From Malacoraja senta (Eukaryota): a DNA stretch of 64,000 nt. A program made the position numbers and the translations under genes. Below, piece by piece: positions 11,001-63,729 of the stretch; the first letter of the stretch is position 1; each line of letters begins with the position of its first letter. The stretch lies in contig JAXLNO010000913.1 in assembly GCA_038087875.1 (NCBI GenBank), forward strand, positions 62,001 through 126,000, given 5' to 3'. Below the pieces are notes generated by a model. It worked only from the letters and a program-made list of their open reading frames with translations, made no database searches and was not told where the DNA came from.

Positions 11001-11283
11001 GACCAGATATACTTGTCACTTGGCACATATTTTTTGAGTGTCTGGGTCCTCTGACCTTGAAGCTTTTAGACCATCCATATGAACAAATACCCCAACTATG
11101 GACAGACAAACAAATATGGTTATGACCACATTTGCTGTGCCAAGTAACAAATACGTCTGGTCTGAAAGTTTCCTTCATCTCTCTAGTGATGATGTGAAAT
11201 AACTTAAGATGAAGATGTCTATTCTGACTGGAGATCTGTGTCTAGTGATGTTTCATTTAGACAGCTGCACAACAAATACTGTA

Positions 11284-11515
11284 GGTTCACAAAAATGCTG
11301 GAGAAACTCAGCGGGTGCAGCAGCATCTATGGAGCGAAGGAAATAGGTAACGTTTTGGGCCGAAACCCTTCTTCATACATAGAGACCAGTCTGAAGAAGG
11401 GTTTCGGCCCGAAAGGTTACCTATTTCCTTCGCTCCATAGATGCTGCTGCACCCGCTGAGTTTCTCCAGCATTTTTGTGTACCTTCGATTTTCCAGCATC
11501 TGCAGTTCCTTCTTT
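11284..11515. mobile_element. Penelope terminal-repeat-derived hairpin element with hammerhead-like cores
   Basis: Two inverted copies of the repeat; 13-bp TSD aacaaatactgta at 11271-11283 and 11516-11528. Confidence 0.8.
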
Positions 11516-12027
11516 AACAAATACTGTAAGGTTGTTGTAGTAGGGAATTTTAACTTTCCAAATATTGACCGGGAAAATCATAGTGTGAAAGGTTTAGGTG
11601 GGGTGCAGTTTCTCAAAGGTGTTCAAGAGAGCTTTCTCCAACAATACATAGAGAACCCCACTCATGAGCGGACGACACTTGATCTAGTCTTATGAAATTG
11701 GGAAGGTCAAGTGTTCGTGGAGGAGCATTTTGAGACAAGTGTTCGATTAGGTTTAAGATAGTTATTGATAGGGACAGAGAGGGCTCACGAGTTAAATGCT
11801 AAATTGAGGTAAGGCCAACTTTCAGGGTATGAGAGAAAGTCTCGCTCAAGTTCATTGGAGCAGGTTGTTTGAAGGGAAAGGAACATCAGCCAAGTGGGAT
11901 GTTTTAAAAGTGTGATGACAAAAGCTCAGGATATGCACGTCCCCGTTAGAGTGAAGGCAAGGCTGGCAAATGTAAGGAAGCTTGGCTGTTGAGAGAAATA
12001 GAGGCATTGGTTAAGAATAAAAGATCA

Positions 12028-20700: not shown

Positions 20701-22220
20701 TAGGGAAACTGAAGCTCTTCAAACTTCCAGGTTATTTTCCTGTTTTTAATGTAATATTCCCACTGTTTCATATCCTGTAAGTAGCATACAGTAAATCATC
20801 GTCTATGGCCAAAATAATGAGATGAAGCAAAAATAATGAAATCTGTTTTTACAAAAAAAAAAATCAGATATGTCTCTGTGTTTTCTTGCCTTGTTTTGTG
20901 ACATTTTTCAAGCAGGATTTCATCAAATCCTAAGGCTAATTTATACCAGAAAGATTACATTAATTTTGCAATTAAATAACTCTATATAAGCCAAATTCTG
21001 ATTATGCTTATGATTTTTTAATCATTTATCACCCGATTAGATGGCCCAAGTTTGTGCAGCACAACGTGAGTAGCCGTGTCCTTTTGGTCACGTGTGAAAT
21101 GTGTGAATTAAAAGCAGAGTAACCTGCTTTTTTTATTTTTTAATCGTTTTTTATTTATTGTTTCTCTTTTTATTGTTTATATTTTGTGTTGAAGCTTTCC
21201 ATTGAAATACGTAATAATGAATAGAACTTAAAATCATGAAATAAAAATCTAGTTTGCTCACCTATTTTATTGATCTCATTTTCCCTCCAGTTTTTGACAT
21301 CGTCAATGTTATAACGTTTTTTTTTGCACTCGTCGCAATTTATAAAAAATTCAAAAAAACGCAGCTGTAATGACTGACCTGAACTATGGGCCTTGTGGTG
21401 GGTTATGTGCCGACAGTTTGTAAGGGAGCTTAGAAATCAGAATAAGAGACAATGTCCCAGTGGTCATGTTGTGCTCTGAATAACATTGTGTTCACTTTTT
21501 TTTGCTTGGAATCATTGGTTAGTAAAAATCGTTTTGCACTTTTTCATTCTTTTCTCATAAATGTTGCTTCTTGTTTACTATAGAAATGTTTGAATTCCGT
21601 TAAACTTTAATTGCTTGTTGCTATGTTGTTGCAAAGTGTGTGCACTGGAGCGAAAGGAATCGAAAGATCCAGATTACGCCATGTCTCGTTGAAAGTATGC
21701 TCCTGTCTACACAGATGCTTTTGGTTCCAGGCAAATTTCGAGTAACTTAACATCGAATTTGATGAAAGGTTACTATATTCTTTCTCATTTATGTATATAT
21801 ATTTTTTTAATTTTGATATATAATTTCCTGTAGCAATGTTTTACAATAATGATCTTTGTAATACATTCAAAGAAATTGTTCGATAAAATTAGCACAAATT
21901 AACAATACATGTATCGAATCTCAAAACTTCAGACATAAAGGCACTGAGCTGATTATCATCTAGTTGAGAACTGAGTGGTAGTTCACCGAAAATATTGGTG
22001 AAACTCGTACCCACCCCTTCCCAGCAAAGTTTGGACTGATGCCATATTTTGAGAGCCCTTCATATAGATCACGCAGGTCCCTTTAGAAAACAGAAGGGGG
22101 GAATTGGGAATGCTTATTCACAGAAAGCAACTGTGCACTGTGCCAAAGGGGGACTCCCGCGCAATAGTTGAACACCAGACAGAAGGCGTACTACACAAAT
22201 ACAATCCTTCAGAATCATCT

Positions 22221-22371
22221 CTGGAGAGAAGGAATGGGTGACGCTTCGGATCGACACCCACTCGAAACGTCACCCATTCTTTCTCTCCAAAGATGCAGCC
22301 TGTCCTGCTGAGTTACTCCAACATTTTGTGTCTACCTTTGATTTAAAGCAGCACCTGCAGTTCTTTCCAAA
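22221..22371. mobile_element. Penelope terminal-repeat-derived hairpin element
   Basis: Inverted repeat halves flanked by a 20-bp direct repeat acaatccttcagaatcatct (22201-22220, 22372-22391). Confidence 0.7.
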
Positions 22372-26011: not shown

Positions 26012-28107
26012 TAAATCATCTTAAGCCCAGATATCATTTTGTGCATTTTTCACCGTGAATTGTTTACTTTGTGGAGTCCAATACATTGCAAATTTTATAT
26101 TTGGATTGAACCAGACCAAACTTTATAAGTGTCATGAATAGTGGATGTAATTGAAAACATTTCAGTTCATATATTATTGATCCAAAACATACTTGTCACT
26201 TTCCAGAGGATGAGACGGAACTGCTGACGATCTCCTCATCCCTAGCTGGTACCACCCTGACTTATCTCCCAGTATATTATAGTGTCAGGAATGTACTAAA
26301 GGTCAGATGCTGATGGATCTGACCTTCGCCTCTGTTGCTGAACTCTGCAACGTGACTGAGAGTGGACCACAGATATAGGAAATTGAGGAACGAGATGTAC
26401 CCTATATTTGGTTGCTCAGCTTCCCACTGACCACAACTTCCATATGTTTAAATCGGGTAACTGATCATGATGAAAAAGATGAGTGAAGCAAATGGTTCCT
26501 GTACCTTAAACAAAAACAAACACTTGAAGAACACAGCAAGCCAATTACCATTGCGGATGGAAAAGTTGTAAGCCAACATTTGAGGTTGAGACCTTTTGGG
26601 TTGGAACCCTTCTTCAGTCTGAAATGTCACCCATCCTTTTCCTCCAGAGATGCTGCTTGAACTGCTGAGTCACTTCAGCACTTTATGTCTATCTTCGGTA
26701 TAAACCAGCACCTGCAGTTCCTTTCTACCCTGCATTGAAAAGGATTTTGGCAGCAGAAACTGTCACAGGTCATCAAGGCAATCTAGGGTAGCCCCTACAT
26801 CTGAGAGTCATACAGTACAGAAACAGCCCCTTGAGCTTACCTTGTCATGGCCATCCTATCATTACTAAATTCATTTACTACCACTTGGTCTATGATTTAA
26901 AGTGCCTTGGTTTAGTCACTGCTCATGGACCACTCCGGTGGGTCTGCTATGTCAGTGAGCTCTGACGCTCAACAAGATACATAGGGCTACAAAGACTGAT
27001 GTGACCATGGAGGTCATCGCATGTGAGTTGCGAGTTGACCCAATGTAAAATTACAGTATATTCATCCCCATGCTTTGTAAACAAAAGTATGTTATTTAAA
27101 ATAAGCTGCATCAAGAATCTGTGATTAGCATTAATGAATAAATGAATAACACAATCGGATGTCATAACTTGATGTCAGTTTGAGAAGGAAGTGAGAGAGA
27201 TGTTGTTTTTAAAAATCCTACCTTGTAATCTATGATTTAGCTGCGAGTCCGGTATAGTTATAAAATATTTTCCAGTACCAGCCTGGAAAATTTGATGTAA
27301 TTAGGAATGAAGTAAGTGTGAAATTTTAGGGAATCCTGGAGATTAATTAAAACTCAAAGTCAGGTAGGCTGAGTGTGATTAAAAAAGATTCAACCCAACC
27401 TGCCCTCTTCCAAGCATAATGAAGGTGGGACAGTTGATCATCTAATCCCAGAAGATGGATTGACTGATTCAAGCTTGTAGCCTCGAATTTAACATCAAAC
27501 AAGTCCATCCTTTACTGGGTTGCCAACCCATTTCTGTGTTCTGGGCCACAGGACACCTGGCTGATGAAAGAAGATATGGATAACCAAAAACTACCTATGG
27601 GTCGTGAGGAGCAGAAGGAGAACGTACCTTTGCCTTTCTCAAGAAGAGCCCTGTCCCTTCCTCCCTTGCTTAACAGAACAGTAGCTTGCTTACTTTATCT
27701 TGACAATTTCAACATCAAAAGGTACCTAAACCTATTCATATGGACCATACAGGACCACCACCTTATTAATAATAATAGGTATTTTGCACCACCACCTTAT
27801 TAATAACAATAGGTATTAACATCAACATTTAAAAAATATCTCTAATCATCATTGATATTTAACAGTATTTAAAAAAAATCTTTGGCCATACAAGTTGTCA
27901 AAAGTCTATTAGGGCAATTAGAAGGTGTGAAGACTCAGGAGTCAGGACCACCGCCAAGGCCCAACCCAATAACTTGCCCAATCCTTCCATGTCAAGACAG
28001 GGACTTTTTGATTCAAAATTAATATGATCCGTTTGATGTTCTTCGCTAAATTAAGTGTGCAAAAAATGATGGTGTCCTCTCATGCTCTCAAATCTTTAGG
28101 AAAATAT

Positions 28108-29397
28108 CTATACAATGTTTAAAAGATTAGAAATTACTTTATGCCTGAGATGCCACTCTAAGCATTGAATTGCAACATTATCAACCATTGAGTCAAACTT
28201 ATTGGCAAACAGGTGATGCTGCTGTAACATCCACTTCAGATCTCCTGCTCCGTACACACACACTGCACGGATGTGTTCACCAGTGCAGGGTGGATAAGGT
28301 GCTCCTTTGGAAACATCACCTTCTAGGTAGCTCCATTTTACCAGTTTTGCTATAGCATTCATGTCAGAGATGTCAAATTTCTTACTGACAGGGGTTGATC
28401 CAGGGACATCAGGCATTCTTTGAAGGGTTGCCCACATGTGCTCATCGGGACTGTAAGTGTCCTTTTCCCATTCAATAAACTTCTGTACTTTAGGGCTTCT
28501 CCATAAATATTCCACAAAATCTCTATTAACAACAAAATAGGCACTTCCAGAAAACATTGGTGTGTCAATTGGAGGAGGTTCTTTATCAATCGCTGCATTT
28601 TTTATCGCTCCATTCACTATAGTATGTTTCACTTTCCACCTCTTTGCTTTATGGGGTGCGGTCATTTCTGTTTCCAGACTGTTTGATCCTTTTAAGGTTT
28701 TGAGTATTTCCACCATTTCTAGATTGGTTTTTATGGGGAAATCCACGCCACAGAGATTAATGAGGTATTTCCATTTTGATTTATTTCGTAGGAGATCTTT
28801 CATACAGTTTAAATCGGCCTGAACCCTACTCCAGGATGCATAGATTACAGACTCAAAATGGCTAGCAAGAAATACATTATCAAAGCATGCAGCAATGCTC
28901 TTAACTGCATCTTGAAAGATCTTGGGTGATTTTTGGTCCACATGAATACAGTAAAAATTCTGAGGTGTGTATATGGACCTTAAAAGTCTTTCAAACATCT
29001 CAATTCTATGATGGATTATAATTGAATATGCTATTGGAAAATCTTCCTCTTCTTTACTCAGTGGAAATGTGATATATTTTTGTAACTTAATGTAGTTACC
29101 ACAGTGTTTGGTCAAGTTTATGTAATCTTTCTCATTCAGCACATAACGATGTTTATACGCTTTTGACATTGTCTGAAGTTTAGCGTATTGTATTGCCTCT
29201 TCATTTCCATTGATAATGTTCGTACAGTTTACGTAATATCTGGGATCCTCTTCAGTGAGTTCCAAGTTTACATAATCTTTCTCATGGCTTATGAGAATGA
29301 ATAATGCCACCAAAGAGATGACTCCTGTCAAAATCCACTTAGACTGCCTGCACCTGAGATAACGGTACCTGAGATGACAGAGCTTTGTGCACAACAT
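28108..29397 (-). CDS. GCNT1: Core-2 beta-1,6-N-acetylglucosaminyltransferase (GT14 family), GCNT1-like; single coding exon, ~429 aa
   Basis: Intact ORF with type II TM segment (WILTGVISLVALFILIS) and GT14 motifs FPIAYS, YCIHVD, YASWSRVQADLNC, YLINLCG.DFPIKTNLE, FSGSAYFVV, DTYSPDE, EGDVSKGAPYPPC, HHLFANKFD. The ORF track starts at a TTG (29454). In-frame ATGs lie at 29430 (weak context) and 29397 (A at -3, gives GCNT1-like length). Splice acceptor ttttgttgcag ends at 29524. GCNT1 versus GCNT3 orthology is not certain. Confidence 0.9.
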   Translation of the reverse strand: MLCTKLCHLRYRYLRCRQSKWILTGVISLVALFILISHEKDYVNLELTEEDPRYYVNCTNIINGNEEAIQYAKLQTMSKAYKHRYVLNEKDYINLTKHCGNYIKLQKYITFPLSKEEEDFPIAYSIIIHHRIEMFERLLRSIYTPQNFYCIHVDQKSPKIFQDAVKSIAACFDNVFLASHFESVIYASWSRVQADLNCMKDLLRNKSKWKYLINLCGVDFPIKTNLEMVEILKTLKGSNSLETEMTAPHKAKRWKVKHTIVNGAIKNAAIDKEPPPIDTPMFSGSAYFVVNRDFVEYLWRSPKVQKFIEWEKDTYSPDEHMWATLQRMPDVPGSTPVSKKFDISDMNAIAKLVKWSYLEGDVSKGAPYPPCTGEHIRAVCVYGAGDLKWMLQQHHLFANKFDSMVDNVAIQCLEWHLRHKVISNLLNIV

Positions 29398-30112
29398 ATT
29401 TGATCCAGTTAAAATATTGACTGTACTCATCAACAGTTTCCTTTCCACAGCCAAATTGGGGTTTCACGGCAGAGCACCCTCTTTAATCTCAGAAAAGTTG
29501 ATTCTCCTGCAATCGTGGGATAACTGCAACAAAATAAGTTACACAAATTACATTGCCTGTTCAATAAATAAACATTAGAAACACTCAAAATGAATGGTAT
29601 GAAAATAGCACTTCAATTTTACATTTAAAATCAATAAAACACTGAGAGAATTAAAAAGTAACAGCACAACCTGATGATTAGCAATAGTGCTTCAATCTTG
29701 TCCTTATAATGATAGACATGCAATTAAGATTTACAGAGGTGCATTGTAATAATGAAAGTGAAATACTAAATACATGATTGTTGGTATACATTTACAACAA
29801 ACCATTAGTGAAGTACAGTTGTAAACTTGAAAATACATAGCTCTATTATAATACATCTAACTGAAAATTGAAAATTAGGTTTAATTATAATTGTTTTCTG
29901 TTTCAAACATAAAAGCAAAAGTAAATGTCAGAATTAGATCACTGGAACAACTCTGTATGTAGCTGATTGGAAAATGGTGACTAATCTTATTTAACTACTG
30001 TGAAACAATAACAGAAGCTATTTACACACCTCACCAGTATCCCAATCTTTAATAATCCTAGAATAAGCCCACAACCTTTATTCCTTTTCCTTTCAATAAT
30101 ATGCTGTGCCAT

Positions 30113-34830: not shown

Positions 34831-35302
34831 TTCTGCTCCTATATTCGATTCGATACAGGTCTACCTCATCTGGAAGAGAGCCCAATGATCCATTTACTCG
34901 AATCCCTCCTCCCTGCACCAGCTCCTGCGTCATGCATTTATTTATCCATGTGTAGGAAGGAACTGCAGATGCTGATTTAAACCGAAGATAGACACAAAAA
35001 GCTGGAGTAATTCAGCGGGACAGGCAGCATCTCTGGAGAGAAGGAATGGGTAACATTTTGGGTCGAGACCCTTCTTCATACTCTTTATCTATACTATATA
35101 TCTGTTCCTTGCCTAGCTAGCTTAAATATTTGAATTAACCAACCCTCATTTACATTATTTATTTGCATATTTGTATCTTTAACCAAATCATAACAATAGA
35201 ATGCATTTTACAACAGCAACATTAATCAAAATTTGAATCTGAGTGATGGAAAGAACTATCGGGGCTAAATGAATAAAAAATGTATTCCAGAGACAGGTGT
35301 TA

Positions 35303-38384: not shown

Positions 38385-38708
38385 ATGTCTATCTTCAGTA
38401 TAAACCAGCATCTGCAATTCCTTCCTACACTCTAGATCACTGGGAAAACCATAAGGTGTTCCGTATGTGTAGGAAGGAACTGCAGATGCTGGTTTAATGC
38501 GAAGATAGACATAAGAGGCTGGTGTAGACAGCATCAGCGGGTCAGACAGCATCTCTGGAGAAAATAAATAGGTAATGTTTTGGGTTGAGACCCTTCTTCA
38601 GACCAAAAGAAGACGGTCTGAAGAAGGGTTTCGACCGAAACATCACCTATTCCTTTTCTCCAGAGGTGCTGTCTGACCCACAGATTTACTCCAGTATTTT
38701 GTGTCTAT
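38385..38708. mobile_element. Penelope terminal-repeat-derived hairpin elements
   Basis: Inverted repeat pair with cores at ~38573-38601 (-) and ~38618-38647 (+); direct repeat ataaggtgttc at 38451 and 38709. Confidence 0.7.
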
Positions 38709-39649
38709 ATAAGGTGTTCTGTCGTCTGCCTCCTTTTGCATCTGTAGGTACCATAATGAAACACCATTTCACCATGTTGGTTCAACCAGAGAGGGCTTAG
38801 GACCCTCCGGATAGGCTTTTGCTCCTCCACCCGTACAGGGTGCCTTAAAGGCCAAACTACTCCCTATGTCAAGGTCTGCAAGTCAAGCTTGTCACAACTG
38901 CTTGTAGATAGCTATGGCAATAGTTTTTACTGCTCGTATGATCATAATTCTTGTGTGCTTCCTTATTTTTCATGACTGTGTCGATATAGACAATGTTTCT
39001 CCTTTTTGTTTACTGTTGCCCACTGCTCTCGGATGTCTGGTGCTGGTGTTCTAGTGAGGTAATACAACTTGTAAGAAAAAGGAACTGCAGATGCTGGTTT
39101 ATACCAAAGATAGACACAAAATGCTGGAGTAACTCAGGGGGTTAAGCAACATCTCTGTCAGTCTGTAGAAGGGTCCCAACCTGAAACATCACCTTTCCAT
39201 TTTCGCCTGAGTTGCTGCCTGACCCGCTGAGTTACTGTAGCATTTTGTGTCTGCCATACAAGGTTGAGTGTGCATTGGTTTTAAGGCACCTGGTAACGAA
39301 TCTCCCTGTTCAATCACGCAGAGTCTGATCCAAACTGGCATTTAAGGAGGCAGATTGTGTTTGCACTGCATATGCAGCATTGTAAATAGTTCAGAAATAT
39401 GTCCTTATCATGTTTAGATATGATATTTATTAATCCTTTTACATCCAGTATCACAAATTTCCTTTAAGGTAGTGATGAGAAAAAGCAGGGAATCTCTTTT
39501 AACCAGACGAGATTTCCTGTTCCAACAAACAGAAAGAAAATTGAAATTTGTAAAAAAAAAGGTAACATATTTAGCCCTCTCAACCTCTCATGTCAAAGAT
39601 GTTTGACACTTTAGCATTATAATACTAAATACACTCTGACCGAGGCAGT

Positions 39650-43391: not shown

Positions 43392-45471
43392 GCCTGTCCC
43401 ACTTGGGCGAAATTTGGGGGACATTTAGGCGACAGCCGAAAAAGAGGTTGTCGCGTCGTGGTTGGGTCGTGACGCGGGCGTGATGCGTGGTAACGCATGC
43501 TGTGGCGTGCGGTGCTTCTCTGTCGCCTCAGGACTTTGGAATATTCAAAATCCTGGGGCGACATTTGGGTGTCTCATCTTGTCGTGCGCCCTGTCACACG
43601 CTGACGTATGCTGTCCTGTGGGTGACGTCCAGTTAGGGTTGGGGTTAGGGTTGGGGTTAGGGACCATAGATGGGGTGTAAAATATTCTTCCTTCAATGCA
43701 TGGATTTTAAACATTAATATATTAAAATTAATACAATAAAATCAATTGTGCAAATGAAAAGATGTCTGAGTCATTCAGTTTTATTTATAGATGTATTGGT
43801 CCGCTTCCAGATCCGATCACCGTCTCTATAATTTTTCACAGGGATGGATTCAGTGAGTGTAGACTGAACTCCCCTCTGCCCTCTTCCCCCTTCCCGCCCC
43901 ATCCCTCCTTCTCCACTCCCCGACTCTTCTCCCCTCCCCTCTCCCCTCCCCTCTCCCCCCCTCTTCCCTTCCCCCTGCTCCACTCTTCTCCCCCTTATCC
44001 ACTATCCTCTTCTCCTCCTCTCCCTCCCTTCTCCCATTCTCCAACCCCCCCCCCCCACGTTCCCCGACGCCCCCCCCCAGTTGTAGACCCAGCCTGCGAC
44101 CAGCGATCCCCCACACACTATCCCACACACGCTAGGGACAATTTATACAAACCTGTGCGCCTTTGGAGTGCGGGAGGAAACCCAAATCCTAACCCTAATC
44201 CTAGCCCTAATCCTAACCCTAACCCTGACCCTAACCTTAACCCTGACCCTAACATTAACCGTAACCCTAAACCTAACTCTAAGTTGATGGGCTTGGTATA
44301 AGTATAAATTGTCCCTAGTGTGTGTGGGATAGTGTGCGGGGGATCGCTGGTCGGTGCGGACTCGAAGGGCACTGTATCTCTGAACTAAATGTGACACAGG
44401 GGCCCCAGGAGTTGGACTCGAACCCCCACTGTTCTGCCTGCTCCTCATGGGAACTAAACTCTTGGCCACGAGTTGTCCCAGAGGCAGATCTCTCTTCCAA
44501 TGGTCTCTCCAAACCCCCAAAGACTGCGGGCTTTTCAACTGGGTACAGGCAATGTTGTCAATGTACCAGTGCCACCCACCTGCTCCGGCCACTGAGTCTA
44601 AATACCCACCACCCATTTTGAAGCAAGGCGAGCGTGGGGGGGGGGGGGGGGGGAGGGTGTTGTTCCCAAAGTCTGCATTTATCCCATAGTCAATGTTACT
44701 AAAACAGATGATGTGGCCTATGTATCAGTGAAGAGTGGAGCGGGGAGAAGGGAGGAGAGGGTGCGCCCCCCATTTGTGGACCCAGCCTGTGACAGCTAGA
44801 TCCCACTAACAACTCGTGGTCTACAGTTTAGTTCCAATGAGGCTAGGGTTAGGGTTAGTGTTTGGGTTTCCTCCCCTACTCCAAAGGCGCACAGGTTTGT
44901 ATAAATTATCCCTAGTGTGCGGGGGATAATATGTGGGGGATCGCTGGTCACAGGCTGGGTCCACAAATGGGGGGCATTGGGGAAAGGGGGTGGTGGACAA
45001 TGGTAGAAGGGAGGGAGAGGGGGAGAGGGGGAGAAGGGGATGTGAGGGGAAGGGGGTAGTGGATAAGGGGGAGATGAGTGGAGCGGGGAGAAGGGAGGAA
45101 GAGGGGAGAAGGGAAGAAGGGAGGGGAGGGGAGTGGAGAAGGGTAAGGGGGAGTGGAGAAGGAGGGATGGGGGCGAGAGGGGAGGGAGGTTCAGTCAGTG
45201 ATCGGATCTGGAGACAGTGATCAGATCTGGAAGCAGACCAATACATCTATAAATAAAACTGAACGACTCAGTTCATTTGCACAATTGATTTTATTGTATT
45301 AATTTTAATTGATTAATGTTTGAAATCCATGCATTGAAGAAAGAATATTTTACAGCCTCACCCGCATGACAGCATACGTCAGCGTGTATGTCATGCAACT
45401 TGACGGTTTTATGGGCTTCAGTCACTGACGCTCCGCAGTCGCCCAAATGTCGCCCAAGTGGGTCAGGCCCT
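43392..45471. mobile_element. Large foldback element with Harbinger-type termini, SINE-derived pieces and telomere-like repeats
   Basis: Ends gcctgtcccacttgggcga / tcgcccaagtgggtcaggccct; long inverted arms ~43595-44205 versus ~44845-45388; TTAGGG/CCCTAA-like tracts. Confidence 0.7.
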
Positions 45472-46117: not shown

Positions 46118-47180
46118 GCAAGGAAACAGGCCATTGTTAAGGGGCTGTCCCACTTGGGCGACCTAATCTGCGAGTTTAGAAGAGTGTCTTCGACCTTCAA
46201 ACTCGCAGCATGGTCGACACGTGGTCCTAGGAGGTCCTATTAGGTCACTGGAACTGGAACTCTCCTTCAAGCTCGAGGGACGTTCCTGAATACTTTTCCT
46301 GAGTAAAATTTGGTCAGCATGGTTCTTTTTGACTTGTATTGCAGTGGAGTGGGGTTGCTATTTAGTTACAGGCAGTCGAGGGCAGCCGCAGGCAATCTCC
46401 TTTGCTGACCGGGCACTTTGATTGGCTCATTTGAGTTTTCAGGACCAAGGAAAACTTATCGGTAGGTAAAATGCCCGCTAAACTTTATTAAACTTCTTAA
46501 AAGTGTCTTCACTACTTCTCCCCCTTCTCCCCTCCTTCTCTCCCCTTCTCCCCCCTTCTCCCCCTTCTCCCCCCTTCTCTCCCCTTCTCTCCCCTTCTCT
46601 TTCCCTCTCTGCCCTTCTCCCCCCCCCCCCTCCGCGCTCTCTAAAGGACTTGCCATTACTGTGCAGCCATTTTATCTTCCTCTTCATCGCGGGTGTGAAT
46701 TTCAGACAGCGCTCCCCCGCTTTCCCTGGCCCCCGCCTTTGCGATGTGTTTGTGCGTGCGGTCGGTCGATCCAGCTCGCGGTTTCAACGCGGACGGTCGA
46801 TCCAGCTCGAGGGTTTCCAGGCGAGTGCCCTCGAGCTTGAAGGTCGAACACACTCTTCTTAACTCGCGGATTAGGTCGCCCAAGTGGGACAGCCCCTTTA
46901 GCTGTTTGTTGGGTGAAAATTAGAAGCTGGTGTGACTTGGGTGGGGATAGAGGGGGAATGCCGGGGTTACTTGAAGTTAGAGAAATCAATGTTCATACAA
47001 CTGGGCTGTAAGCTGCCCAAGTGAAATATGAGATGCCGTTCCTCCAATTTGCGTTTAACCTCACTTTGACAATGGAGGAGAACTTGGACAGAAAGGTCTG
47101 TGTGGGAATGGGAAGGAGAATTAAAGTGTTTAGCAACAGGGAGATCAAGTAGGTAAGCGAAGGTGTTCAGCGAAACAAAC
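46118..47180 (-). mobile_element. Penelope-like fragment (host of the MITE)
   Basis: LPVAKHFNSPSHSHTDLSV..LLHCQSEVKRKLEERHLIFHLGSLQP. Confidence 0.8.
46140..46897. mobile_element. PIF/Harbinger-type MITE inserted in a Penelope fragment
   Basis: TIR aggggctgtcccacttgggcgacctaat; TTA TSD at 46137-39 and 46898-900; empty site ccattgTTAg is seen in the related Penelope copy at ~5896. Confidence 0.9.
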
Positions 47181-47887
47181 ACTCTTCATATAGAAGAGAC
47201 AGATTGTCATAATAAGAATTATTGGACAGACCAGTCTTGTATCCAATGGTGTTTAGAAGAATAAGAAATTTAACTAAAATATAAGATTCAGAGGGGTCTT
47301 GACAAGGCAAAAATGTTTCAGATCCTAGATGTAGGGTAATTGTTTAAAAATTCCTCTCAAAGTATCATCAGACTCATTGGACAGTGGAAATAGATTCAGA
47401 TGGATTCTTAATAAGCAGGAGGGTAAATAGTTACTAATGGGTGAGGTGGCAGAATGCGGAGTTGAGGTTATGGTCAAAATCATCCATGATCATATTGAAC
47501 AATGGACCTACTGCTGCTCCTAATTCATATGCTCATATAAAATATTGCTTGCGGTGGATCTTATTTGTTGCTGAATGGTTGTTATATTATGTAATGTTAA
47601 ATGAAAGCATTAAACACTAAGATGGCGTTATTAGCACCAGATCACTGTGGCTATTCAGTGTAAATGCACCAATATCTTTAGCAGCACGCCATCCGGCACA
47701 AAATAGACCGTAATTACACAACGTCAATTCACCCTATTTTTTGCATTCAAGAGGAAATGCAGGTTTGTATCCAGTAGCTTTTAATTAAAAGGTTGATTCA
47801 AAAATAACTTTTGCTTGCATTTACTCAAACATGACTTACATAGCATAAATAATATTTAATCAGTAAGCAGAATCATGTTTCAATGTT

Positions 47888-48090
47888 AGACACACAAAAA
47901 ATTGAGTAATTCAGCGGGTTAGACAGCATCTCTGGAGAAAAGGAATGGGTGACGTTTCGGGTCGAGACTCTTCTTCAGACCCTGAATCATCACCTATTCC
48001 TTTTCTCCAGCAATGCTATCTGACCCGCTGAGTTTCTCCATCTTTTTATGTCCATTTTCAGTTTAAACCAGCAACTGCAGTTTCTTCCTG
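47888..48090. mobile_element. Penelope terminal-repeat-derived hairpin element
   Basis: Inverted pair; hammerhead-like core on the minus strand at 47951-47978. Confidence 0.7.
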
Positions 48091-48365
48091 CATATGTAAC
48101 AATGTAATCATTTCTTAGGAATTATCATTCAATTTAAAATTAATTATCATTTATCAACGTTGGTCTCACTTCAGTCACATTTTCACAATGATGAATTTCA
48201 CTCTAATAGAAAGGATGCATTTATGGCCTAAAACTCCTACAAAGGGATAATTTAACAATTATTAACAGTATTATTATGAACAACAATATTTCAGATTAAC
48301 TTCATAAAACAAAAGGTACAGAGGAAATCGAAAATCTACTCTTAAAACAATTCACATTTCTAGAT

Positions 48366-48661
48366 AGACAAAAGTGCTGGAGAAACTCAGCGGGTGCAGC
48401 AGCATCTATGGAGCAAAGGAAATAGGCAACATTTCGGGCCAAAACGTTGCCTATTGAGTCTGAAGAAGGGTTTCGGCCTGAAACATTGCCTATTGAGTCT
48501 GAAGAAGGGTTTCGGCCCGAAACGTTGCCTATTGAGTGAAGAAGGGTTTCGGCCCGAAACGTTGCCTATTTCCTTTGCTCCATAGATGCTGCTGCACCCG
48601 CTGAGTTTCTCCAGCACTTTTGTCTACCTTCGATTTTCCAGCATCTGCAGTTCCTTCTTAA
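48366..48661. mobile_element. Penelope terminal-repeat-derived hairpin element containing a tandem hammerhead-core array
   Basis: 14-bp TSD tcacatttctagat (48352-48365, 48662-48675); inverted arms; 39-nt units. Confidence 0.85.
48442..48570 (+). ncRNA. Tandem minimal hammerhead ribozyme cores (putative)
   Basis: CUGAAGA-agggUUUCGGccc-GAAA-C-GUU repeated at 39-nt spacing (CTGAAGA at 48460 and 48499; third unit lacks CT). Only the second unit has a fully intact core. Confidence 0.6.
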
Positions 48662-48699
48662 TCACATTTCTAGATTATAGGTTTTGATGTAGAATTACA

Positions 48700-50200
48700 G
48701 TTAAGATGACCACTATCATCCCAGTGCCAAAGAAAGCAAGATCATGTTTCTCAATTATCATTGTCCATTGGTTCTGACCTCTAACATCATGAAGTGCTTT
48801 GAGAGGCCGGTCATGGCACACATTAATGCAGCCTCCAAGACAACCCTGCCTATGCCACAACAGGTCCATAACATATGCCATCTTTCTGGCCCTACACACA
48901 TTTGGAACATCTTTCTAGATAACATCAGACTCCTATTTACTGGCTATAGCTCTGCCTTCAATACCATAATCCCAATCAAACTTATCTTCAAACTTTTGGA
49001 ACTAGCAGTCATTCTAATGGGCCGGATCTCGAACAATGACAAGACTGAATACAAAAAGAACATAGAGAACTTTCTTATCTGGTGGCAAGATATCACTGCA
49101 GAAGGATCTCTACTTAAAACGTCACATATTCCTTTTCTCCAGTGATGCTGCCTGACCCACTGAGCTACTCCAGCTTTTTATGTCAACCTCTCCCTCAATG
49201 TCAGCAAGACAAAAGAGCTTGTTATTGACTTCAGGAAATGAGGTGGTGTACATGTCCCAATCAGCATCATTGGTGCTGAAGTGGAAATAGTCAAAATCCT
49301 TAGGTTCCCAAGAGTAAATGTCACCGATAATTTGTACTGAAACAGCCACATTAAAGCTAGGGTAAAAAAACACACAAAGTCTCTACTTCCTCAGAAGACT
49401 AAAGGGCCTGTCCCACGAGCATGCGACTGCATGCGGGTAGCGTGACCTAACGTGGTCACGCTAGCCGTATGGCCTCGCGGGGCCGGTCGCACTTCGATCG
49501 CCGGAGCCGTATGGAGTTGTGCGGAGCTGGTCCCGACACCGCGCGGGGCTCCGTAAAACTGACACTGTCCCAAAATTCCGCGCGGCAACGCCCTGCTGGC
49601 CCGCTGCCGCATTGAGGCGGTACGCACCGCCTTGACGGGCGTAAGCACCGCCTCGACGCCGTACGCACCGCCTCGACACCGTACACAGAGTCTTGATGCC
49701 GTACACAGCGTCTTGATGGCGTACGCCTATCGCGTGGCATTGCGCGATGACGTCACCGCCCGGCGTGCCGTTGCGTGATGACGTAACCGCCCGACGCCGT
49801 GCGACTTCCAACTTTAGTCGGCCCGCCTCCTGCCCAGCTGATTGGTGAGTATGATGTCGGGACCAGCTCCATACGGCTCCGCGGTTGGAAGTGGGACCGG
49901 CCCCGTTTGGTCGCGCTCGCCGCATGCAGTCGCATGCTGGTGGGACAGGCCCTTAAGGCAGTTTGAGATCTCCGAAGACTCTTTCTGTCATCTACAGATG
50001 CACCGTAGGAAGCATACTATCGGTTGTATCTCAGCATGATTTGGGAACAGCTCTGCTTAAGAATGAAAGAAATTACAGAGTTGTAAACGCAGCCCAATCA
50101 CACAAACCAGCCTCTTTCCACAATCAACTCCATCTACACTTCACTCTGCCTTGGGAGAGCAGCCTTCCATAATCAATGACCAATAACACCCTAGTCAATC
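48700..50200 (+). mobile_element. Decayed Rex-Babar LINE fragments hosting a Penelope unit and a Harbinger MITE
   Basis: LTSNIMKCFER, YSSAFNTIIP, LNVSKTKELVIDFRK. Confidence 0.75.
49403..49953. mobile_element. PIF/Harbinger-type MITE (same subfamily as 35303-35902)
   Basis: TIR agggcctgtcccac.agcatgcgactgcatgcgg; TAA TSD at 49400-02 and 49954-56. Confidence 0.9.
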
Positions 50201-60003: not shown

Positions 60004-60677
60004 CAGGGAAGTTACACACAATCCTATCCAATATTTATTCTTCAATCAAAAATTTCTAAACAACATTATCTGAACAAGCAAATGCTCTTTGTATAAGCTT
60101 TCTTTGTGTATATTGGCAATTGTTGCTATATTATCACAGTGACTATGGTTCTAAGTTGTTTACTTAGCTATGAAGCAAATTGGATTGGGAAAAGCCCTAT
60201 GTAAATATATACAATCAGGTAAACAGAAGAATTAGGATTGGGATCCAGTCTCTTGGTCACTCAGGTTGATCCGTTATTCAATAATTTCATGGCTGATGAA
60301 TTGTAATCCATTCCTCACTACCCTCGGTAACATGCAGTTCTTTTATTTATTAAGTATCTATTCGCTTCAGTATCTTAGCCTGTGAAATATTCAAAGACTT
60401 ATCTGCCACAGCTCTTGGGGGCAGAGTTTCAAAGTTTCATAATCCTTCACAACTAGATATTTAGCCTAGTTAGCAAATGCAGTGCCTCATTTTTAAACTA
60501 TATCCCCAAGCTCTGAGTTCACCCATTAGGATTCTTCGCCATATCTAGCCAAGCAAAACTCCCTCAGGTTCTTATATGTTTCAATCAAATCATCTTTCTC
60601 CATTTCTAAACTCCATTGAATTAGGTATTAGTCTTTGTAAACCTTTTCTAAAATGATTCCAACACATTTACTAACCT

Positions 60678-61931
60678 GTTAAAGAAGGAACTGCAGATGC
60701 TGGAAAATCGAAGGTACACAAAAATGCTGGAGAAACTCAGCGGGTGCAGCAGCATCTATGGAGCGAAGGAAATAGGTAACGTTTCGGGCCGAAACCCTTC
60801 TTCAGACTGATAGGGGGTGGGGAGAAGAAAGGAAAAAAGGAAAAGGCGGAGGAGGAGCCCGAGGGCTGGGGGAGGAGACAACCAGATGGCTGATGAAGGG
60901 GAGGGGACAGCCAGGGCTAGCAGAATTGGGAGAATTCAACGTTCAGGCCACCAGGATGTAGACTGCTCAAGCGGAATATGAGGTGCATTTCCTCCAATTT
61001 ACGGTGTTGCTCGCTGTGGCCATGGAGGAGACCCAGGACAGAGAGGTCAGATACGGAATGGGAGGGGGAGTTGAAGTGCTGAGCCACCGGGAGTTCAGGT
61101 TGGTTATTGCGGACCGACCGGAGGTGTTCGGCGAAACGATCGCCAAGCCTCCGCTTGGTCTCACCGATGTAGATCAGCTGGCATCTAGAGCAGCGAATGC
61201 AATAGATGAGGTTGGAGGAGATGCAGGTGAACCTCTGTCGCACCTGGAACGACTGCTTGGGTCCTTGAATGGAGTGGAGGGGGGAAGTGAAGGGACAAGT
61301 GTTGCATCTCTTGCGGTTGCAAGGGAAAGTACCAGGGGAGGGGGTGGTATGGGAGGGAAGGGAAGAATTGACAAGGGAGTTACGGAGGGAGCGGTCTTTG
61401 CGGAAGGCAGACATAGGGGGAGATGGGAAGATGTGGCGAGTGGTGGGGTCACGTTGGAGGTGGCGAAACTGACGGAGGATCACTTGTTGTATGTGACGGC
61501 TGGTGGGGTGAAAGGTGAGGACTAGGGGGACTCTTCCTTTGTTGTGAGTGGGGGATGGGGAGAGAGAGCAGTGTTGCGGGGTATGGCAGAGACCCTGGTG
61601 CGAGCCTCATCTATGGTGGAGGAGGGGAACCCCCGTTCCCTGAAGAATGAGGACATTTCAGATGCCCTGGTGTGGAACGCCTCATCCTGGGAGCAGATGC
61701 GGCGTAGACGGAGGAATTGGGAGTGGGGGATGGAGTCCTTACAGGAAGCAGGGTGGGAAGAAGTGTAGTCCAGATAGCCATGGGAGTCGGTAGGTTTGTA
61801 GTGGATGTCGGTAAGGAGTCTATCACCTGCGATGGAGATAGTGAGGTCAAGGAATGGTAGGGAAGTGTCGGAAATGGTCCAGGTGTATTTGAGTGCCGGA
61901 TGGAAGTTGGTGGTGAAGCGGATGAAGTCAG
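60678..61931 (-). mobile_element. Young 5'-truncated Penelope-like element (RT C-terminus, GIY-YIG endonuclease, terminal repeat with hammerhead core)
   Basis: TNFHPALKYTW..LPFLDL..HYKPTDSHGYLDYTSSHP, then after one frameshift CNRKRCNTC..LIYCIRCSRCQLIYIGETKRRLGDRFAEH; 11-bp TSD tttactaacct (60667-60677, 61932-61942). Confidence 0.92.
60778..60805 (-). ncRNA. Minimal hammerhead ribozyme core in a Penelope terminal repeat (putative)
   Basis: CUGAAGA agggUUUCGGccc GAAAC GUU on the element's sense strand. Confidence 0.65.
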
Positions 61932-61964: not shown

Positions 61965-62170
61965 ACACCTGCGGTTTTAAAGATTTTTTAAACCTCACTA
62001 ACTTTTACATTAGACCACCAATCGGAACGAAACTTGGCACAATTGCAGCACAGGAGAACAGTGAGTAAGCTGGTAACAAATCGTAGCCCTATCAAGTACC
62101 GTTTTTGCGCAAATAGAATGACCGCGCAAACCGGAAGATAACAAGATCAGAGCTTTAGTTGTGTATAGAT
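61965..62170 (+). mobile_element. Helitron-like 3' fragment
   Basis: Ends acaagatcagagctttagttgtgtatagat, resembling the end of the 3460-4330 element. Confidence 0.45.
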
Positions 62171-62175
62171 ATTTC

Positions 62176-63150
62176 TAGCCTACAATGCTTGAAAATTGCT
62201 ATGTCAGTGGGATGAGATTGGGCAGAATATTTTTTTTCTGTCTTTGAGACTTAACACAGCTGAGCAATTTAAATCTCAGAAAATTTACTGTCCCAACAGA
62301 AGTAGCTTCCAGCAACAATAAATTAAAAATAATGTGAAATTAAAAATCACAAAGGGCTGCTGAGTTACAAGCATTCTCCTAAACCTCTACAGGTGCACGG
62401 TAGAGAGCATTCTGACTGGTTGCATCGTGGCCTGGTTCGGCAACTTGAACGTCCAGGAGCAGAAAAGACTACAAAATGTTGTGACCACTGCCCAGTCCAT
62501 CACCGGCCTTGACCTCCCCACCGTCAAAGGGATCTATCGTAGTCGCTGCCTCAAAACAGCAGCCAAAATCATCAAAGACCCACACCATCCTGCCACACAC
62601 TCATTTTACCATTGCCATCGGGAAGATGGTGCAGGAGCCTGAAAACTGGAACGTCCAGGTTCAGGAACAACTACTTCCCTACAGCCATCAGGCTATTAAA
62701 CACAACAACAAATAATCTCTGAGCTCTGAACTGCAAAAGACTTTATTATTATTGCACTATATTTGTTATTTATTGAACTTTTTTTCTCTTCCCCCGTTAT
62801 GTACCATGTTTACATATTCACAAATTCTGTTGCGCTGCAGCAAATAAGAATTTAATTGTCCCATCCGGGACATATCCGGGACATAGGACAATAAAACATT
62901 CTTGATTCTTGAGCATTCATTTACAGTACAATACAATCTCAGGATAAAGCCAGTAGAATACAATCTCAGGATATTTTCCAATGTACAGATGACAAAGTGG
63001 TGGAGATTGAAAGACTAATATACTTTCACCCAAAGTATTATTGCATGAGAAAACAATGATAACCGTAGGAAAACTGAAAAGGTAATTAAAAAGTTTCTCA
63101 TGCAATGTCAATTTTTAATTACTGTAAATGCATTGTAGTTCGCAGACTGT
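62176..63150 (+). repeat. Copy 2 of the ~0.92 kb direct duplication
   Basis: Matches 51450-52369 and retains a ~30-bp segment deleted in copy 1. Confidence 0.85.
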
Positions 63151-63729
63151 CCGCACCGACCAGCGATCCCAGCACGTTAACACTATCCTACACACACTAG
63201 GGCCAATCTACACAAATACCACGCCAAATTACCTACAACCTGTATGTCTATGGAGTGTGAGGTGTTTCACTTTGGGATGTTGATTGCAAGAAGAAAGTAT
63301 ACAGATAATGGCAAGATCCTAAACAGCAATGATGTACAGAGCTTACCAGGGATAGGGGATTGCAATTCATCAGCCATATCTTATTGAGTGGCAAAACATC
63401 TTGTATTACCATGTGGCCTGCTCCTAATTCTTTTGTTTATCTGTATACATGTTAGAGCTCCTTGAAGTGGTCACACAAGTAGATGGAGTATTAAAGAAAT
63501 GTATGGTATGGTATGTTTGCCTCGATTGGTCAGGCATGGAGTATGTGTCAGGATCTTGCAGCTTTGTTTAGGCCACATTTGAACTATTCTGTGCAGTTCT
63601 AGTCTCTCAGGAAGTATGTGGAGGCATTAGTGCAAAGATCCAGTTCCTGTGATTTTCTTTAGAATTTTCCCAACTGTTTGGTTTTCTAAATTTACATTTC
63701 TAACAAAACTCTTTCATTACAGTTTTATC

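What the first reader, a model, noticed from the sequence alone, without database searches (positions are those of the whole stretch)
48366..48661. TSD-flanked 296-bp hairpin element enclosing a tandem array of minimal hammerhead ribozyme cores
Seen: the element has inverted arms made of the Penelope terminal repeat and a 14-bp TSD. Between the arms lies a 39-nt unit (aaacgttgcctattgagtCTGAAGAagggtttcggcccG) in about three copies; unit 2 is intact, unit 1 has two substitutions and unit 3 lacks CT. Known: Penelope-like elements carry minimal type I hammerheads with a nearly absent, palindromic stem III (GAAAC-GUH) that work as dimers. Inference: head-to-tail units would place two cores in cis and could allow dimeric self-cleavage into ~39-nt monomers. 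That would be a retrozyme-like non-coding replicon smaller than typical ones, or a trace of repeated template jumping/rolling reverse transcription. Stem I pairing is weak, so activity is uncertain.
Basis: partly seen in the sequence, partly recalled or inferred. Interest (0 to 1): 0.78.

Follow-up and report, generated by a model that had tools for sequence, protein, structure and literature searches.

The report
Penelope hairpin insertion with triplicated hammerhead core
This is one recent hairpin-shaped insertion of a very abundant Penelope-like retrotransposon end-piece in a ray or skate genome, and its 39-base hammerhead-type motif was copied three times, most likely as a by-product of the element's copying enzyme and not as a working mini-ribozyme replicon.

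Summary
There is a 14-bp target-site duplication, a 296-bp element at 48366-48661, near-identical inverted arms, and a 39-nt tandem array of about 3.6 copies. Unit 2 is intact, unit 1 has two CpG transitions, and unit 3 lacks CT.

The arms are the 3' end of a Penelope-like element (PLE). About 24 copies lie in the window, and one of them follows a GIY-YIG ORF. The architecture is the textbook PLE insertion signature: an inverted 5'-truncated copy, a 36-nt "tail" on one end only, and a variable-length TSD. It recurs at 6-7 other loci in the window.

The unit matches the published PLE minimal-hammerhead descriptor. However, helix I is only 2 bp, no Rfam hammerhead model matches, and the cleavage-competent fold is predicted in about 6e-8 of the ensemble.

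Every unit junction joins the family's recurrent RNA 5' end, plus an extra G, to an internal ...CCTATT site. The array is not younger than the arms. The best reading is concatenation at the reverse-transcription stage (template jumping or partial-tandem formation), possibly extended later by slippage.

A retrozyme-like 39-nt replicon is not supported, but it is not excluded. The scan has flagged the same family, and other 39-nt arrays, elsewhere in this genome; I could not check those notes. Interest is low to moderate.

The parts
48352..48365 (.). Left copy of the 14-bp target-site duplication (TCACATTTCTAGAT).
   Evidence: Exact direct repeat that abuts both element ends.
48366..48438 (-). 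Inverted, 5'-truncated copy of the PLE 3' terminal region. It has no tail; its outer end corresponds to ...CACTTTTGTCT.
   Evidence: Its reverse complement matches 48553-48625 at 72/73 positions. It shares four diagnostic substitutions with the right arm relative to the nearest family copies.
48421..48455 (.). Head-to-head inversion junction: a near-palindrome with 17-nt arms and 1 nt between them. It is built on the natural near-palindrome GTTTCGG(C/G)CCGAAAC of stem II plus GAAAC. The last 17 nt (48439-48455) form the partial unit U0.
   Evidence: pair I6 (88% complementary). The mismatches are CpG transitions.
48456..48494 (+). Unit 1 (39 nt): G + AGTCTGAAGA...GCCTATT. Position 11.1 is C>T, giving G.U at the base of stem II. 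Position 16.2 is G>A, giving GAAAC-ATT.
48495..48533 (+). Unit 2 (39 nt), the only unit with an intact minimal-hammerhead motif: CUGAAGA-A-GGGU(UUCG)GCCC-GAAAC-GUU.
   Evidence: (0 mismatches).
48534..48570 (+). Unit 3 (37 nt). C3 and U4 of the core are deleted (GAGT--GAAGA), so this core is dead.
48571..48625 (+). Forward copy of the PLE 3' terminal region downstream of the hammerhead motif. It is the right arm of the hairpin.
   Evidence: 97% identical to the copy that follows the GIY-YIG ORF at 60651-61105.
48626..48661 (+). The 36-nt PLE 'tail' extension, present on the right arm only.
   Evidence: The same tail is present on one arm only in the hairpin copies at 11283-11519, 38473-38704, 39066-39250 and 47892-48087. 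The feature is described in PMC8557442, PMC3846280 and PMC11167929.
48662..48675 (.). Right copy of the 14-bp target-site duplication.

Best explanation
The 296-bp element is a single, fairly recent retro-insertion made by Penelope-like element (PLE) machinery. It derives from a short RNA covering the last ~130 nt of the PLE terminal repeat, from just upstream of the minimal hammerhead motif to the 3' end.

Shown:
- Both arms come from one source.
- The element has a TSD.
- It carries the PLE signature of an inverted 5'-truncated copy plus a ~36-nt tail on one end only.

Inferred mechanism for the hairpin: the PLE enzyme nicked both target strands 14 bp apart and primed reverse transcription on both. 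The right-hand cDNA started at the distal start site and so carries the tail. The left-hand cDNA started at the proximal start site and so lacks it. The two cDNAs were joined at the natural near-palindrome GTTTCGGCCCGAAAC, giving the head-to-head hairpin.

Inferred mechanism for the array: the 39-nt array is a head-to-tail concatenation made at the RNA/cDNA stage. Each junction reads ...GCCTATT | G | AGTCTGAAGA.... That is the family's usual RNA 5' end plus one extra G, as expected from copying a cap, joined to a fixed internal site. The reverse transcriptase therefore reached the 5' end and resumed 39 nt downstream. This happened either repeatedly, or once and then expanded by slippage on the resulting direct repeat. 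It happened either in this insertion event or in the source copy.

The hammerhead cores are passengers of this process. The array is not a self-cleaving replicon.
For: PLE identity:
- About 24 copies of the repeat end lie in the window.
- The copy at 60651-61411(-) follows an ORF with a borderline GIY-YIG match (Pfam E 1.6e-4).
- That ORF's nearest Atlas clusters are eukaryotic GIY-YIG / HTH_animal / RVT_1 proteins (score 0.97).

PLE architecture:
- Head-to-head pairs recur at 6-7 other loci, with TSDs of 13, 20 and 11 bp.
- The inverted arm lacks the tail in 5 of 6 of these.
- The literature describes exactly this: an inverted 5'-truncated copy and a 30-40 bp tail at one end (PMC8557442); a palindrome at the inverted junction (PMC3846280); and a PLE protein that nicks and extends both strands, with two RT start sites bracketing the tail (PMC11167929).

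One event from one source:
- The arms differ at 1 of 73 positions.
- They share four diagnostic substitutions.

Junction evidence:
- All three unit junctions are identical.
- AGTCTGAAGA, preceded by an extra G and then unrelated flank, is the 5' end of the solitary copies at 19479 and 35082. The longer copy at 60781 reads CAGTCTGAAGA.
- The leftmost junction is already present next to the inversion point, so at least the founding junction cannot come from slippage of a single unit.

Age: the units differ by 3 CpG transitions and one 2-nt deletion, against 1 CpG change between the arms, so the array is not younger than the insertion.

Against ribozyme function.
Against: - Only one array could be examined. 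The array is unique in this window, and I could not inspect the other 39-nt arrays that the scan notes report.
- No microhomology explains why a jump should land exactly after CCTATT three times.
- Reading the extra G as cap-derived rests on two solitary copies here and on general knowledge of other retrotransposons. It was not tested for PLEs.
- Later DNA slippage could have added units 2 and 3.
- The age argument rests on very few substitutions.
- Secondary-structure energies ignore tertiary contacts and protein assistance, which PMC11167929 shows can matter for a PLE hammerhead.
Confidence: 0.7

Rival explanations
1. Post-insertion DNA replication slippage or unequal exchange. The element inserted with about 1.4 units (the partial unit at the inversion junction plus one full unit). 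The resulting 17-nt direct repeat spaced 39 bp apart, helped by the hairpin-prone near-palindromes, then expanded to three units in the germline.
For: The array is unique in the window. Short tandem expansions on flanking direct repeats are common. An older copy at about 26560-26625 shows a different local 16-nt duplication of the stem II-GAAA segment. This suggests the palindromic region is duplication-prone.
Against: The units are at least as diverged from each other as the two arms are: 3 CpG changes plus an indel, against 1 change. Any expansion would therefore have been immediate. The founding junction (RNA 5' end + G joined to an internal site) still needs an RT-stage event. Scan notes report the same 39-nt period at other loci (s1-178101, s1-141078; not checked by me), which local slippage does not predict.
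Confidence: 0.2
2. Miniature retrozyme. Adjacent units pair through the AACGUU palindromes to form hammerhead active sites. They cleave the transcript into 39-nt monomers, which are circularised and copied by rolling-circle reverse transcription into arrays.
For: Each unit holds every conserved box of the PLE minimal hammerhead (descriptor in PMC4209133). In cis, a 39-nt spacing allows a 4-bp helix III. Animal non-LTR retrozymes are now argued to derive from PLE terminal repeats, with units as short as 51 bp. By that preprint's loose operational rule (two consecutive units with complete motifs), this locus might even be flagged (bioRxiv 10.64898/2026.07.22.740005). Scan notes mention other 39-nt arrays.
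Against: - Helix I within a unit is 2 bp (G.U plus C-G), and the trans duplex is worth -0.9 kcal/mol.
- The hammerhead-competent fold of an idealised two-unit RNA scores -3.2 against an MFE of -32.7 kcal/mol, about 6e-8 of the ensemble.
- No Rfam hammerhead family matches, even at E<=10 in a 145-nt search.
- Today only unit 2 has an intact core and no core/site pair is fully intact.
- PLE minimal hammerheads cleave poorly even as dimers and trimers (PMC4209133). The hammerhead is dispensable for insertion in vitro, and no reads end at its site (PMC11167929).
- The array sits inside an ordinary linear PLE-type insertion with a normal 3' end.
- The unit junction carries a 5'-end signature that a circle would not create.
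Confidence: 0.04
3. Hairpin-RNA source. If transcribed, the near-perfect 73-84-bp inverted repeat gives a long double-stranded stem that Dicer-type enzymes could process into small RNAs against the PLE family. The array is merely the apical loop.
For: The predicted hairpin is very stable: -181.5 kcal/mol, z = -17.6. There are weak, sub-threshold matches to miRNA-precursor models: mir-577 at 38.8 bits against a gathering score of 100, and mir-722.
Against: The Rfam matches reflect hairpin shape only and lie far below the gathering scores. No expression data exist. The hairpin is explained as a by-product of PLE insertion and is shared by many copies. Nothing indicates selection.
Confidence: 0.05
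4. Assembly artefact: a chimeric or palindromic read creating a false inverted duplication with collapsed or expanded repeats.
For: PLE tandem/inverted structures are known to trouble assemblies (PMC8557442).
Against: An exact 14-bp TSD lies at the exact element ends. The arms carry a CpG difference. The tail asymmetry matches PLE biology. Six to seven analogous loci, each with its own TSD, lie in the same window.
Confidence: 0.01

Closest known systems
Penelope-like element (PLE) insertions with an inverted 5'-truncated copy and a one-sided tail (Evgen'ev & Arkhipova; Arkhipova 2013, PMC3846280; Craig 2021, PMC8557442; Frangieh 2024, PMC11167929)
   Same: The repeat end lies downstream of a GIY-YIG ORF. 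There is a head-to-head inverted copy with a palindrome at the junction. A 36-nt tail is present on one end only. The TSD length is variable. The target is AT-rich. A minimal hammerhead lies in the terminal repeat.
   Different: This is an extreme miniature: no ORF and only ~130 nt of terminal repeat per arm. The forward arm carries three head-to-tail 39-nt sub-copies, in place of the usual kb-scale partial tandem.
Minimal hammerhead motifs of metazoan PLEs (Cervera & de la Pena 2014, PMC4209133; Lunse et al. 2016, cited in PMC6765202 and not readable here)
   Same: The CUGANGA and GAAA boxes are present. An unpaired nucleotide lies between positions 9 and 10.1. The G10.1-C11.1 pair is present. 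There is no loop 3, and positions 15.2-16.2 are palindromic, which implies action as dimers.
   Different: Helix I is only 2 bp here, against 4-5 bp in the published consensus. Helix II is 4 bp, against 6-8 bp. Activity is untested.
Animal non-LTR retrozymes (Cervera & de la Pena 2020, PMC7229834; Li, Clavereau & Pollet 2026 preprint, 10.64898/2026.07.22.740005)
   Same: Head-to-tail repeats each carry a type I hammerhead-type motif, derive from PLE terminal repeats and lack coding capacity.
   Different: The unit is 39 nt, against 150-450 nt (or 51-972 bp). The motif is minimal, not a canonical hammerhead with loop-loop contacts. There are only three units, and they are embedded in a normal PLE-type insertion. 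There is no evidence of circRNA.
Template jumping and concatemer formation by non-LTR and group II intron-type reverse transcriptases, and untemplated 5' G from cap copying in LINE insertions (my own knowledge; not verified in the papers held here)
   Same: The junctions consist of a complete RNA 5' end plus one extra G, joined to another template position, and they repeat.
   Different: The landing site here is internal and fixed (after CCTATT), not an RNA 3' end. Such jumping has not been shown for a PLE enzyme.

Membership tests
Penelope-like element insertion (5'-truncated / non-autonomous) | The sequence is the terminal repeat found next to an RT/GIY-YIG ORF. | tested here: met
   The right arm is 97% identical to 60682-60804, which follows ORF 60917-61483(-). 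That ORF has a Pfam GIY-YIG match at E 1.6e-4, 22.3 bits against a 22.6 cut-off. Its nearest Atlas clusters are eukaryotic GIY-YIG/HTH_animal/RVT_1 proteins. No RT domain was found in that decayed copy.
Penelope-like element insertion (5'-truncated / non-autonomous) | An adjacent inverted 5'-truncated copy forms inverted repeats. | tested here: met
   pair I1. The arrangement recurs at 6-7 other loci in the window.
Penelope-like element insertion (5'-truncated / non-autonomous) | A 30-40 bp tail extension is present at one end only. | tested here: met
   A 36-nt tail (48626-48661) is on the right arm only.
Penelope-like element insertion (5'-truncated / non-autonomous) | A target-site duplication of variable length in an AT-rich target. 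| tested here: met
   The TSD is 14 bp and 10/14 A+T. Other hairpin copies have TSDs of 13, 20 and 11 bp.
PLE minimal hammerhead (Cervera & de la Pena 2014 descriptor) | [quoted passage not shown] | tested here: met
   Unit 2 meets all of these. Unit 1 has G.U at 10.1-11.1 and A at 16.2. Unit 3 lacks C3 and U4 (criteria).
PLE minimal hammerhead (Cervera & de la Pena 2014 descriptor) | A helix I of about 4-5 bp. | tested here: not met
   Only G1.1.U2.1 and C1.2-G2.2 can pair. The trans duplex is worth -0.9 kcal/mol in the array context and +0.7 in the native context.
Hammerhead ribozyme (Rfam RF00163, RF00008, RF02275-7) | A match to a curated covariance model. | tested here: not met
   No hammerhead family matched at the gathering score or at E<=10 in 601-nt and 145-nt searches. 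The Rfam models were not built on loopless minimal variants, so this is weak negative evidence.
Hammerhead ribozyme (Rfam RF00163, RF00008, RF02275-7) | Self-cleavage at the UH site. | not testable with these tools
   This needs in vitro transcription or RNA-end mapping. The predicted ensemble fraction of the competent fold is about 6e-8.
Non-LTR retrozyme | Tandem units each carry an active type I hammerhead. | tested here: inconclusive
   There are three units. One motif is intact, one is weakened and one is dead. At insertion all three may have been intact.
Non-LTR retrozyme | A unit of roughly 150-450 nt (51-972 bp in the widest survey) that forms a self-paired circRNA. | tested here: not met
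   The unit is 39 nt. A circular 39-mer is predicted to be essentially unstructured, at -0.1 kcal/mol.
Non-LTR retrozyme | The same tandem unit is present at many independent loci. | tested here: inconclusive
   There are none elsewhere in this window. The metagenome scan for the junction found 0 hits, and the protein-space search of the array frame found 0. Scan notes list other 39-nt arrays in this genome, but I could not read them.

The most novel reading that the evidence does not exclude
The fixed 39-nt period, which scan notes also report at other loci in this genome, could mean the array is not an accident. It could be a product of rolling-circle reverse transcription of a 39-nt hammerhead-processed circular RNA. 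It could alternatively come from a programmed restart of the PLE reverse transcriptase from the capped 5' end to one defined internal site. Either way it would be the smallest retrozyme-like unit known, and a snapshot of how PLE terminal repeats give birth to retrozymes.
Probability: 0.06. Interest if true: 0.7.

Novelty: new member of a known kind. Interest (0 to 1): 0.25.

Why it matters
As it stands, this is one more copy of a hugely abundant PLE-derived short repeat in a cartilaginous-fish genome. It shows the already described PLE insertion architecture.

Its modest value is as a clean, young example. The arms are ~99% identical and the TSD is exact. All the PLE peculiarities are visible in 296 bp: the two RT start sites (tail on one arm only), the joining of two cDNAs at a palindrome, and head-to-tail concatenation.

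The junction structure (RNA 5' end + G joined to a fixed internal site) is a concrete, testable clue to how PLE enzymes build partial tandems. By extension, it bears on how tandem hammerhead repeats (retrozymes) might originate from PLE terminal repeats.

Tried and rejected
- Rfam scans of the whole window at the gathering score, and of 601-nt and 145-nt sub-regions at E<=10, found no hammerhead family. They returned only sub-threshold miRNA-like hairpin matches, which I reject as shape artefacts.
- An empty-site check using other copies of the flanking LINE fragment failed, because no second copy of the flank exists in the window.
- A search for the unit junction elsewhere found nothing: 0 further matches in the window and 0 in metagenome contigs.
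- The core pattern gave one unrelated metagenome contig, L001.
- A protein-space search with the open frame across the array, intended to find other arrays called as ORFs, gave 28 candidates and none significant.
- I looked for stem II covariation among window copies. Only one-sided, wobble-compatible or CpG-type changes occur (U.G <-> U-A), and there are no compensatory pairs. No structural support can therefore be claimed from this window.
- Helix I covariation could not be tested, because most copies begin at the core and lack native upstream sequence.
- I considered a MITE/DNA-transposon reading of the inverted arms. I rejected it because the arm ends are unequal (one-sided tail), the TSD length varies from 11 to 20 bp, and the arms are a retroelement 3' end.
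- Lunse et al. 2016 (PMC5785218) is not held and could not be read.
- I did not find a citable source for cap-derived extra G in the papers opened. That point therefore rests on my own knowledge.

Full report
**1. Observation**

The sequence is as described.
- An exact 14-bp direct repeat, TCACATTTCTAGAT, lies at 48352-48365 and 48662-48675 and abuts a 296-bp element at 48366-48661.
- The element has inverted arms. The repeat finder reports 84 nt at 96% complementarity (I1). Over the 73 nt that are true element sequence, the arms differ at one CpG position.
- TRF finds one array at 48432-48570, with period 39, 3.6 copies and 92% matches.
- Unit 2 (48495-48533) is intact. Unit 1 (48456-48494) carries two CpG transitions. 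Unit 3 (48534-48570) lacks the CT of CTGA.
- As RNA, the element folds into one long hairpin: -181.5 kcal/mol, z = -17.6.

**2. What the arms are**

The right arm and its continuation belong to a repeat family with about 24 partial copies in the 64-kb window. The core string occurs 10 times, against 0 expected.

The copy at 60651-61411 (minus strand) extends upstream into ORF 60917-61483. That ORF has a borderline GIY-YIG match: Pfam E 1.6e-4, 22.3 bits against a cut-off of 22.6. Its nearest ESM-Atlas clusters are eukaryotic GIY-YIG / HTH_animal / RVT_1 proteins, the domain set of Penelope-like elements. A homologous ORF fragment lies at 46967-47182. "Penelope terminal repeat" is therefore supported.

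Earlier notes of this scan say the same about this family in the same ray or skate genome. I treat those notes as leads only.

**3. The hairpin is the standard PLE insertion signature**

Head-to-head pairs of this repeat recur in the window at about 2892/3329, 11283-11519, 22210-22367, 38473-38704, 39066-39250 and 47892-48087. Exact TSDs of 13, 20 and 11 bp flank the three clearest ones.

In 5 of 6 pairs, the inverted arm stops at ...TTTTGTGTCT while the forward arm continues for another ~36-40 nt. In the present element that extension is 48626-48661.

The PLE literature describes exactly this:
- A palindrome at the inverted junction (PMC3846280).
- Biochemically, a PLE protein that nicks and extends both target strands and starts reverse transcription at two nearby internal sites, with the tail lying between them (PMC11167929).

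Both arms share four substitutions that distinguish them from the closest family copies: GTTG, CTTTGCT, GCACTTT and TGTCT. They were therefore made in one event from one source RNA.

The inversion point lies in the natural near-palindrome GTTTCGG(C/G)CCGAAAC, formed by stem II plus the GAAAC box. The forward and reverse-complement forms share 7 nt there (I6, 32).

My inference is as follows. Two antisense cDNAs were primed on the two nicked strands. They annealed through this palindrome and each was filled in. This explains why only one arm carries the array.

**4. Is the unit a hammerhead?**

At motif level, yes. Unit 2 reads CUGAAGA, an extra A, stem II GGGU-UUCG-GCCC, then GAAAC followed directly by GUU. 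Cervera & de la Pena (PMC4209133) list four features of PLE minimal hammerheads beyond the search boxes:
- the G10.1-C11.1 pair;
- a palindromic 15.2-16.2;
- family-level covariation.

The first three are met.

The rest of the evidence is negative or weak.
- Covariation: among window copies, stem II shows only U.G <-> U-A and other one-sided or CpG-type changes.
- Helix I: it is limited to G.U plus C-G. The trans duplex is worth -0.9 kcal/mol.
- Rfam: no hammerhead family matches, even at E<=10 in a 145-nt search. Those models do not target loopless variants, so this is weak negative evidence.
- Folding: in an idealised two-unit RNA, the cleavage-competent fold scores -3.2 kcal/mol against an MFE of -32.7, about 6e-8 of the ensemble. 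Neighbouring units pair with each other through the near-palindromes.
- Present state: core 1 has G.U at 10.1-11.1, the site after unit 1 has A at 16.2, and core 3 is dead.
- Published data: PLE minimal hammerheads cleave poorly even as dimers and trimers (PMC4209133). A PLE hammerhead needed the PLE protein, was dispensable for insertion in vitro, and left no RNA-seq ends at its site (PMC11167929).

**5. How the array arose**

Phasing the array by its junctions gives G + AGTCTGAAGA...GCCTATT, repeated. A 17-nt partial unit (48439-48455) next to the inversion point already ends in ...GCCTATT and is joined to G-AGTCTGAAGA.

AGTCTGAAGA is where solitary short copies begin. The copy at 19479 reads flank-G-AGTCTGAAG, and the copy at 35082 reads flank-G-AGTATGAAG. 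The longer copy at 60781 reads CAGTCTGAAG. Most arms of the other hairpin copies also end within 0-4 nt of CTGAAGA.

Each junction therefore joins a complete RNA 5' end plus one extra G to an internal position. The extra G is what cap copying would add; that point rests on my own knowledge. This is a reverse-transcription-stage signature: a template jump, or a miniature version of PLE partial-tandem formation.

At least the founding junction cannot come from slippage of a single unit. Further units may have been added by repeated jumps or by slippage on the 17-nt direct repeat then present.

The landing site follows ATT, the motif preferred by the anole PLE nuclease. I cannot test whether that is meaningful.

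The units differ by 3 CpG transitions and one 2-nt deletion, while the arms differ by one CpG change. The array is therefore not younger than the insertion, although the numbers are small.

**6. Recurrence**

The array is unique in this window. I could not find it in metagenome contigs or in protein space.

Scan notes list other arrays in this genome: five 39-nt units (s1-178101), four ~39-nt units (s1-141078), two cores in a 151-bp TSD-flanked unit (s1-200054), and an inverted copy plus four tandem copies (s1-175014). All but s1-175014 are first-reader notes without follow-up, and I could not read the sequences behind any of them.

A recurrent RT-stage process or an array-bearing subfamily then becomes more likely than local slippage. 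Neither needs ribozyme activity.

**7. Comparison with known systems**

The element is a member of the PLE-derived short-repeat family and shows known PLE insertion architecture.

It resembles animal non-LTR retrozymes, which are now argued to be PLE terminal-repeat derivatives with units of 51-972 bp. It resembles them only in having tandem hammerhead-type motifs. It fails on unit size, hammerhead quality and context.

Minimal hammerhead copies in tandem within PLEs have been noted before, in axolotl (PMC7229834).

**8. Verdict**

It is a new member of a known kind, of low to moderate interest. Its residual value is as a compact, young record of PLE double-strand priming and concatenation.

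Noticed in passing
window 11283-11519: A second young hairpin copy of the same subfamily (99% identical to the 60781 copy), with a 13-bp TSD (AACAAATACTGTA). Both arms reach the hammerhead core and are separated by 7 nt of filler. The tail is on the right arm only. One arm has ATGAAGA in place of CTGAAGA.
   Followed up: partly
window 26560-26625: An older inverted copy whose reverse-complement arm carries a 16-nt direct duplication of the stem II-GAAA segment (GGGTTCCAACCC-AAAA / GGTCTCAACCTC-AAAT). This is another local duplication at the palindromic core region.
   Followed up: no
window 43632-45184: Interstitial telomere-like repeats: (GTTAGG)n at 43632-43662 and (AACCCT)17 at 44179-44282. 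They are embedded in C-rich and G-rich low-complexity arrays of opposite polarity on the two sides.
   Followed up: no
window 28108-29454 (-): An intact 448-aa single-exon ORF with a Core-2/I-branching enzyme domain (Pfam Branch, E 3.5e-60). It is probably a host GCNT-type glycosyltransferase gene.
   Followed up: no
window 15612-17681 (+): An uninterrupted 689-aa ORF with a reverse-transcriptase domain (RVT_1, E 7e-31). It may be a young LINE-type copy.
   Followed up: no
window 60917-61483 (-) and 46967-47182 (-): PLE endonuclease-region ORFs (borderline GIY-YIG), homologous to each other. The first lies directly upstream of a terminal repeat with an intact core. No RT domain was seen upstream, and a different repeat is inserted at about 62169-63151.
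   Followed up: partly
L001 1-80 (metagenome contig JAAUYA010020226.1, minus strand): This contig has the same core and stem II (CUGAAGA-A-GGGUUUCGACCC-GAAAC). Here they come with a 2-bp helix III capped by the palindromic loop UGCA, a GUC site and a 4-bp GCGG/CCGC helix I, making a more canonical type I hammerhead. It gives a weak Rfam Hammerhead_3 match (15 bits, E 0.7). The contig ends inside the motif.
   Followed up: partly
window 48700-49145 (+): The hairpin element sits just upstream of a decayed LINE reverse-transcriptase fragment (...LTSNIMKCFERPVMAHI...). That fragment is itself interrupted by another old copy of the PLE end at 49091-49183.
   Followed up: no
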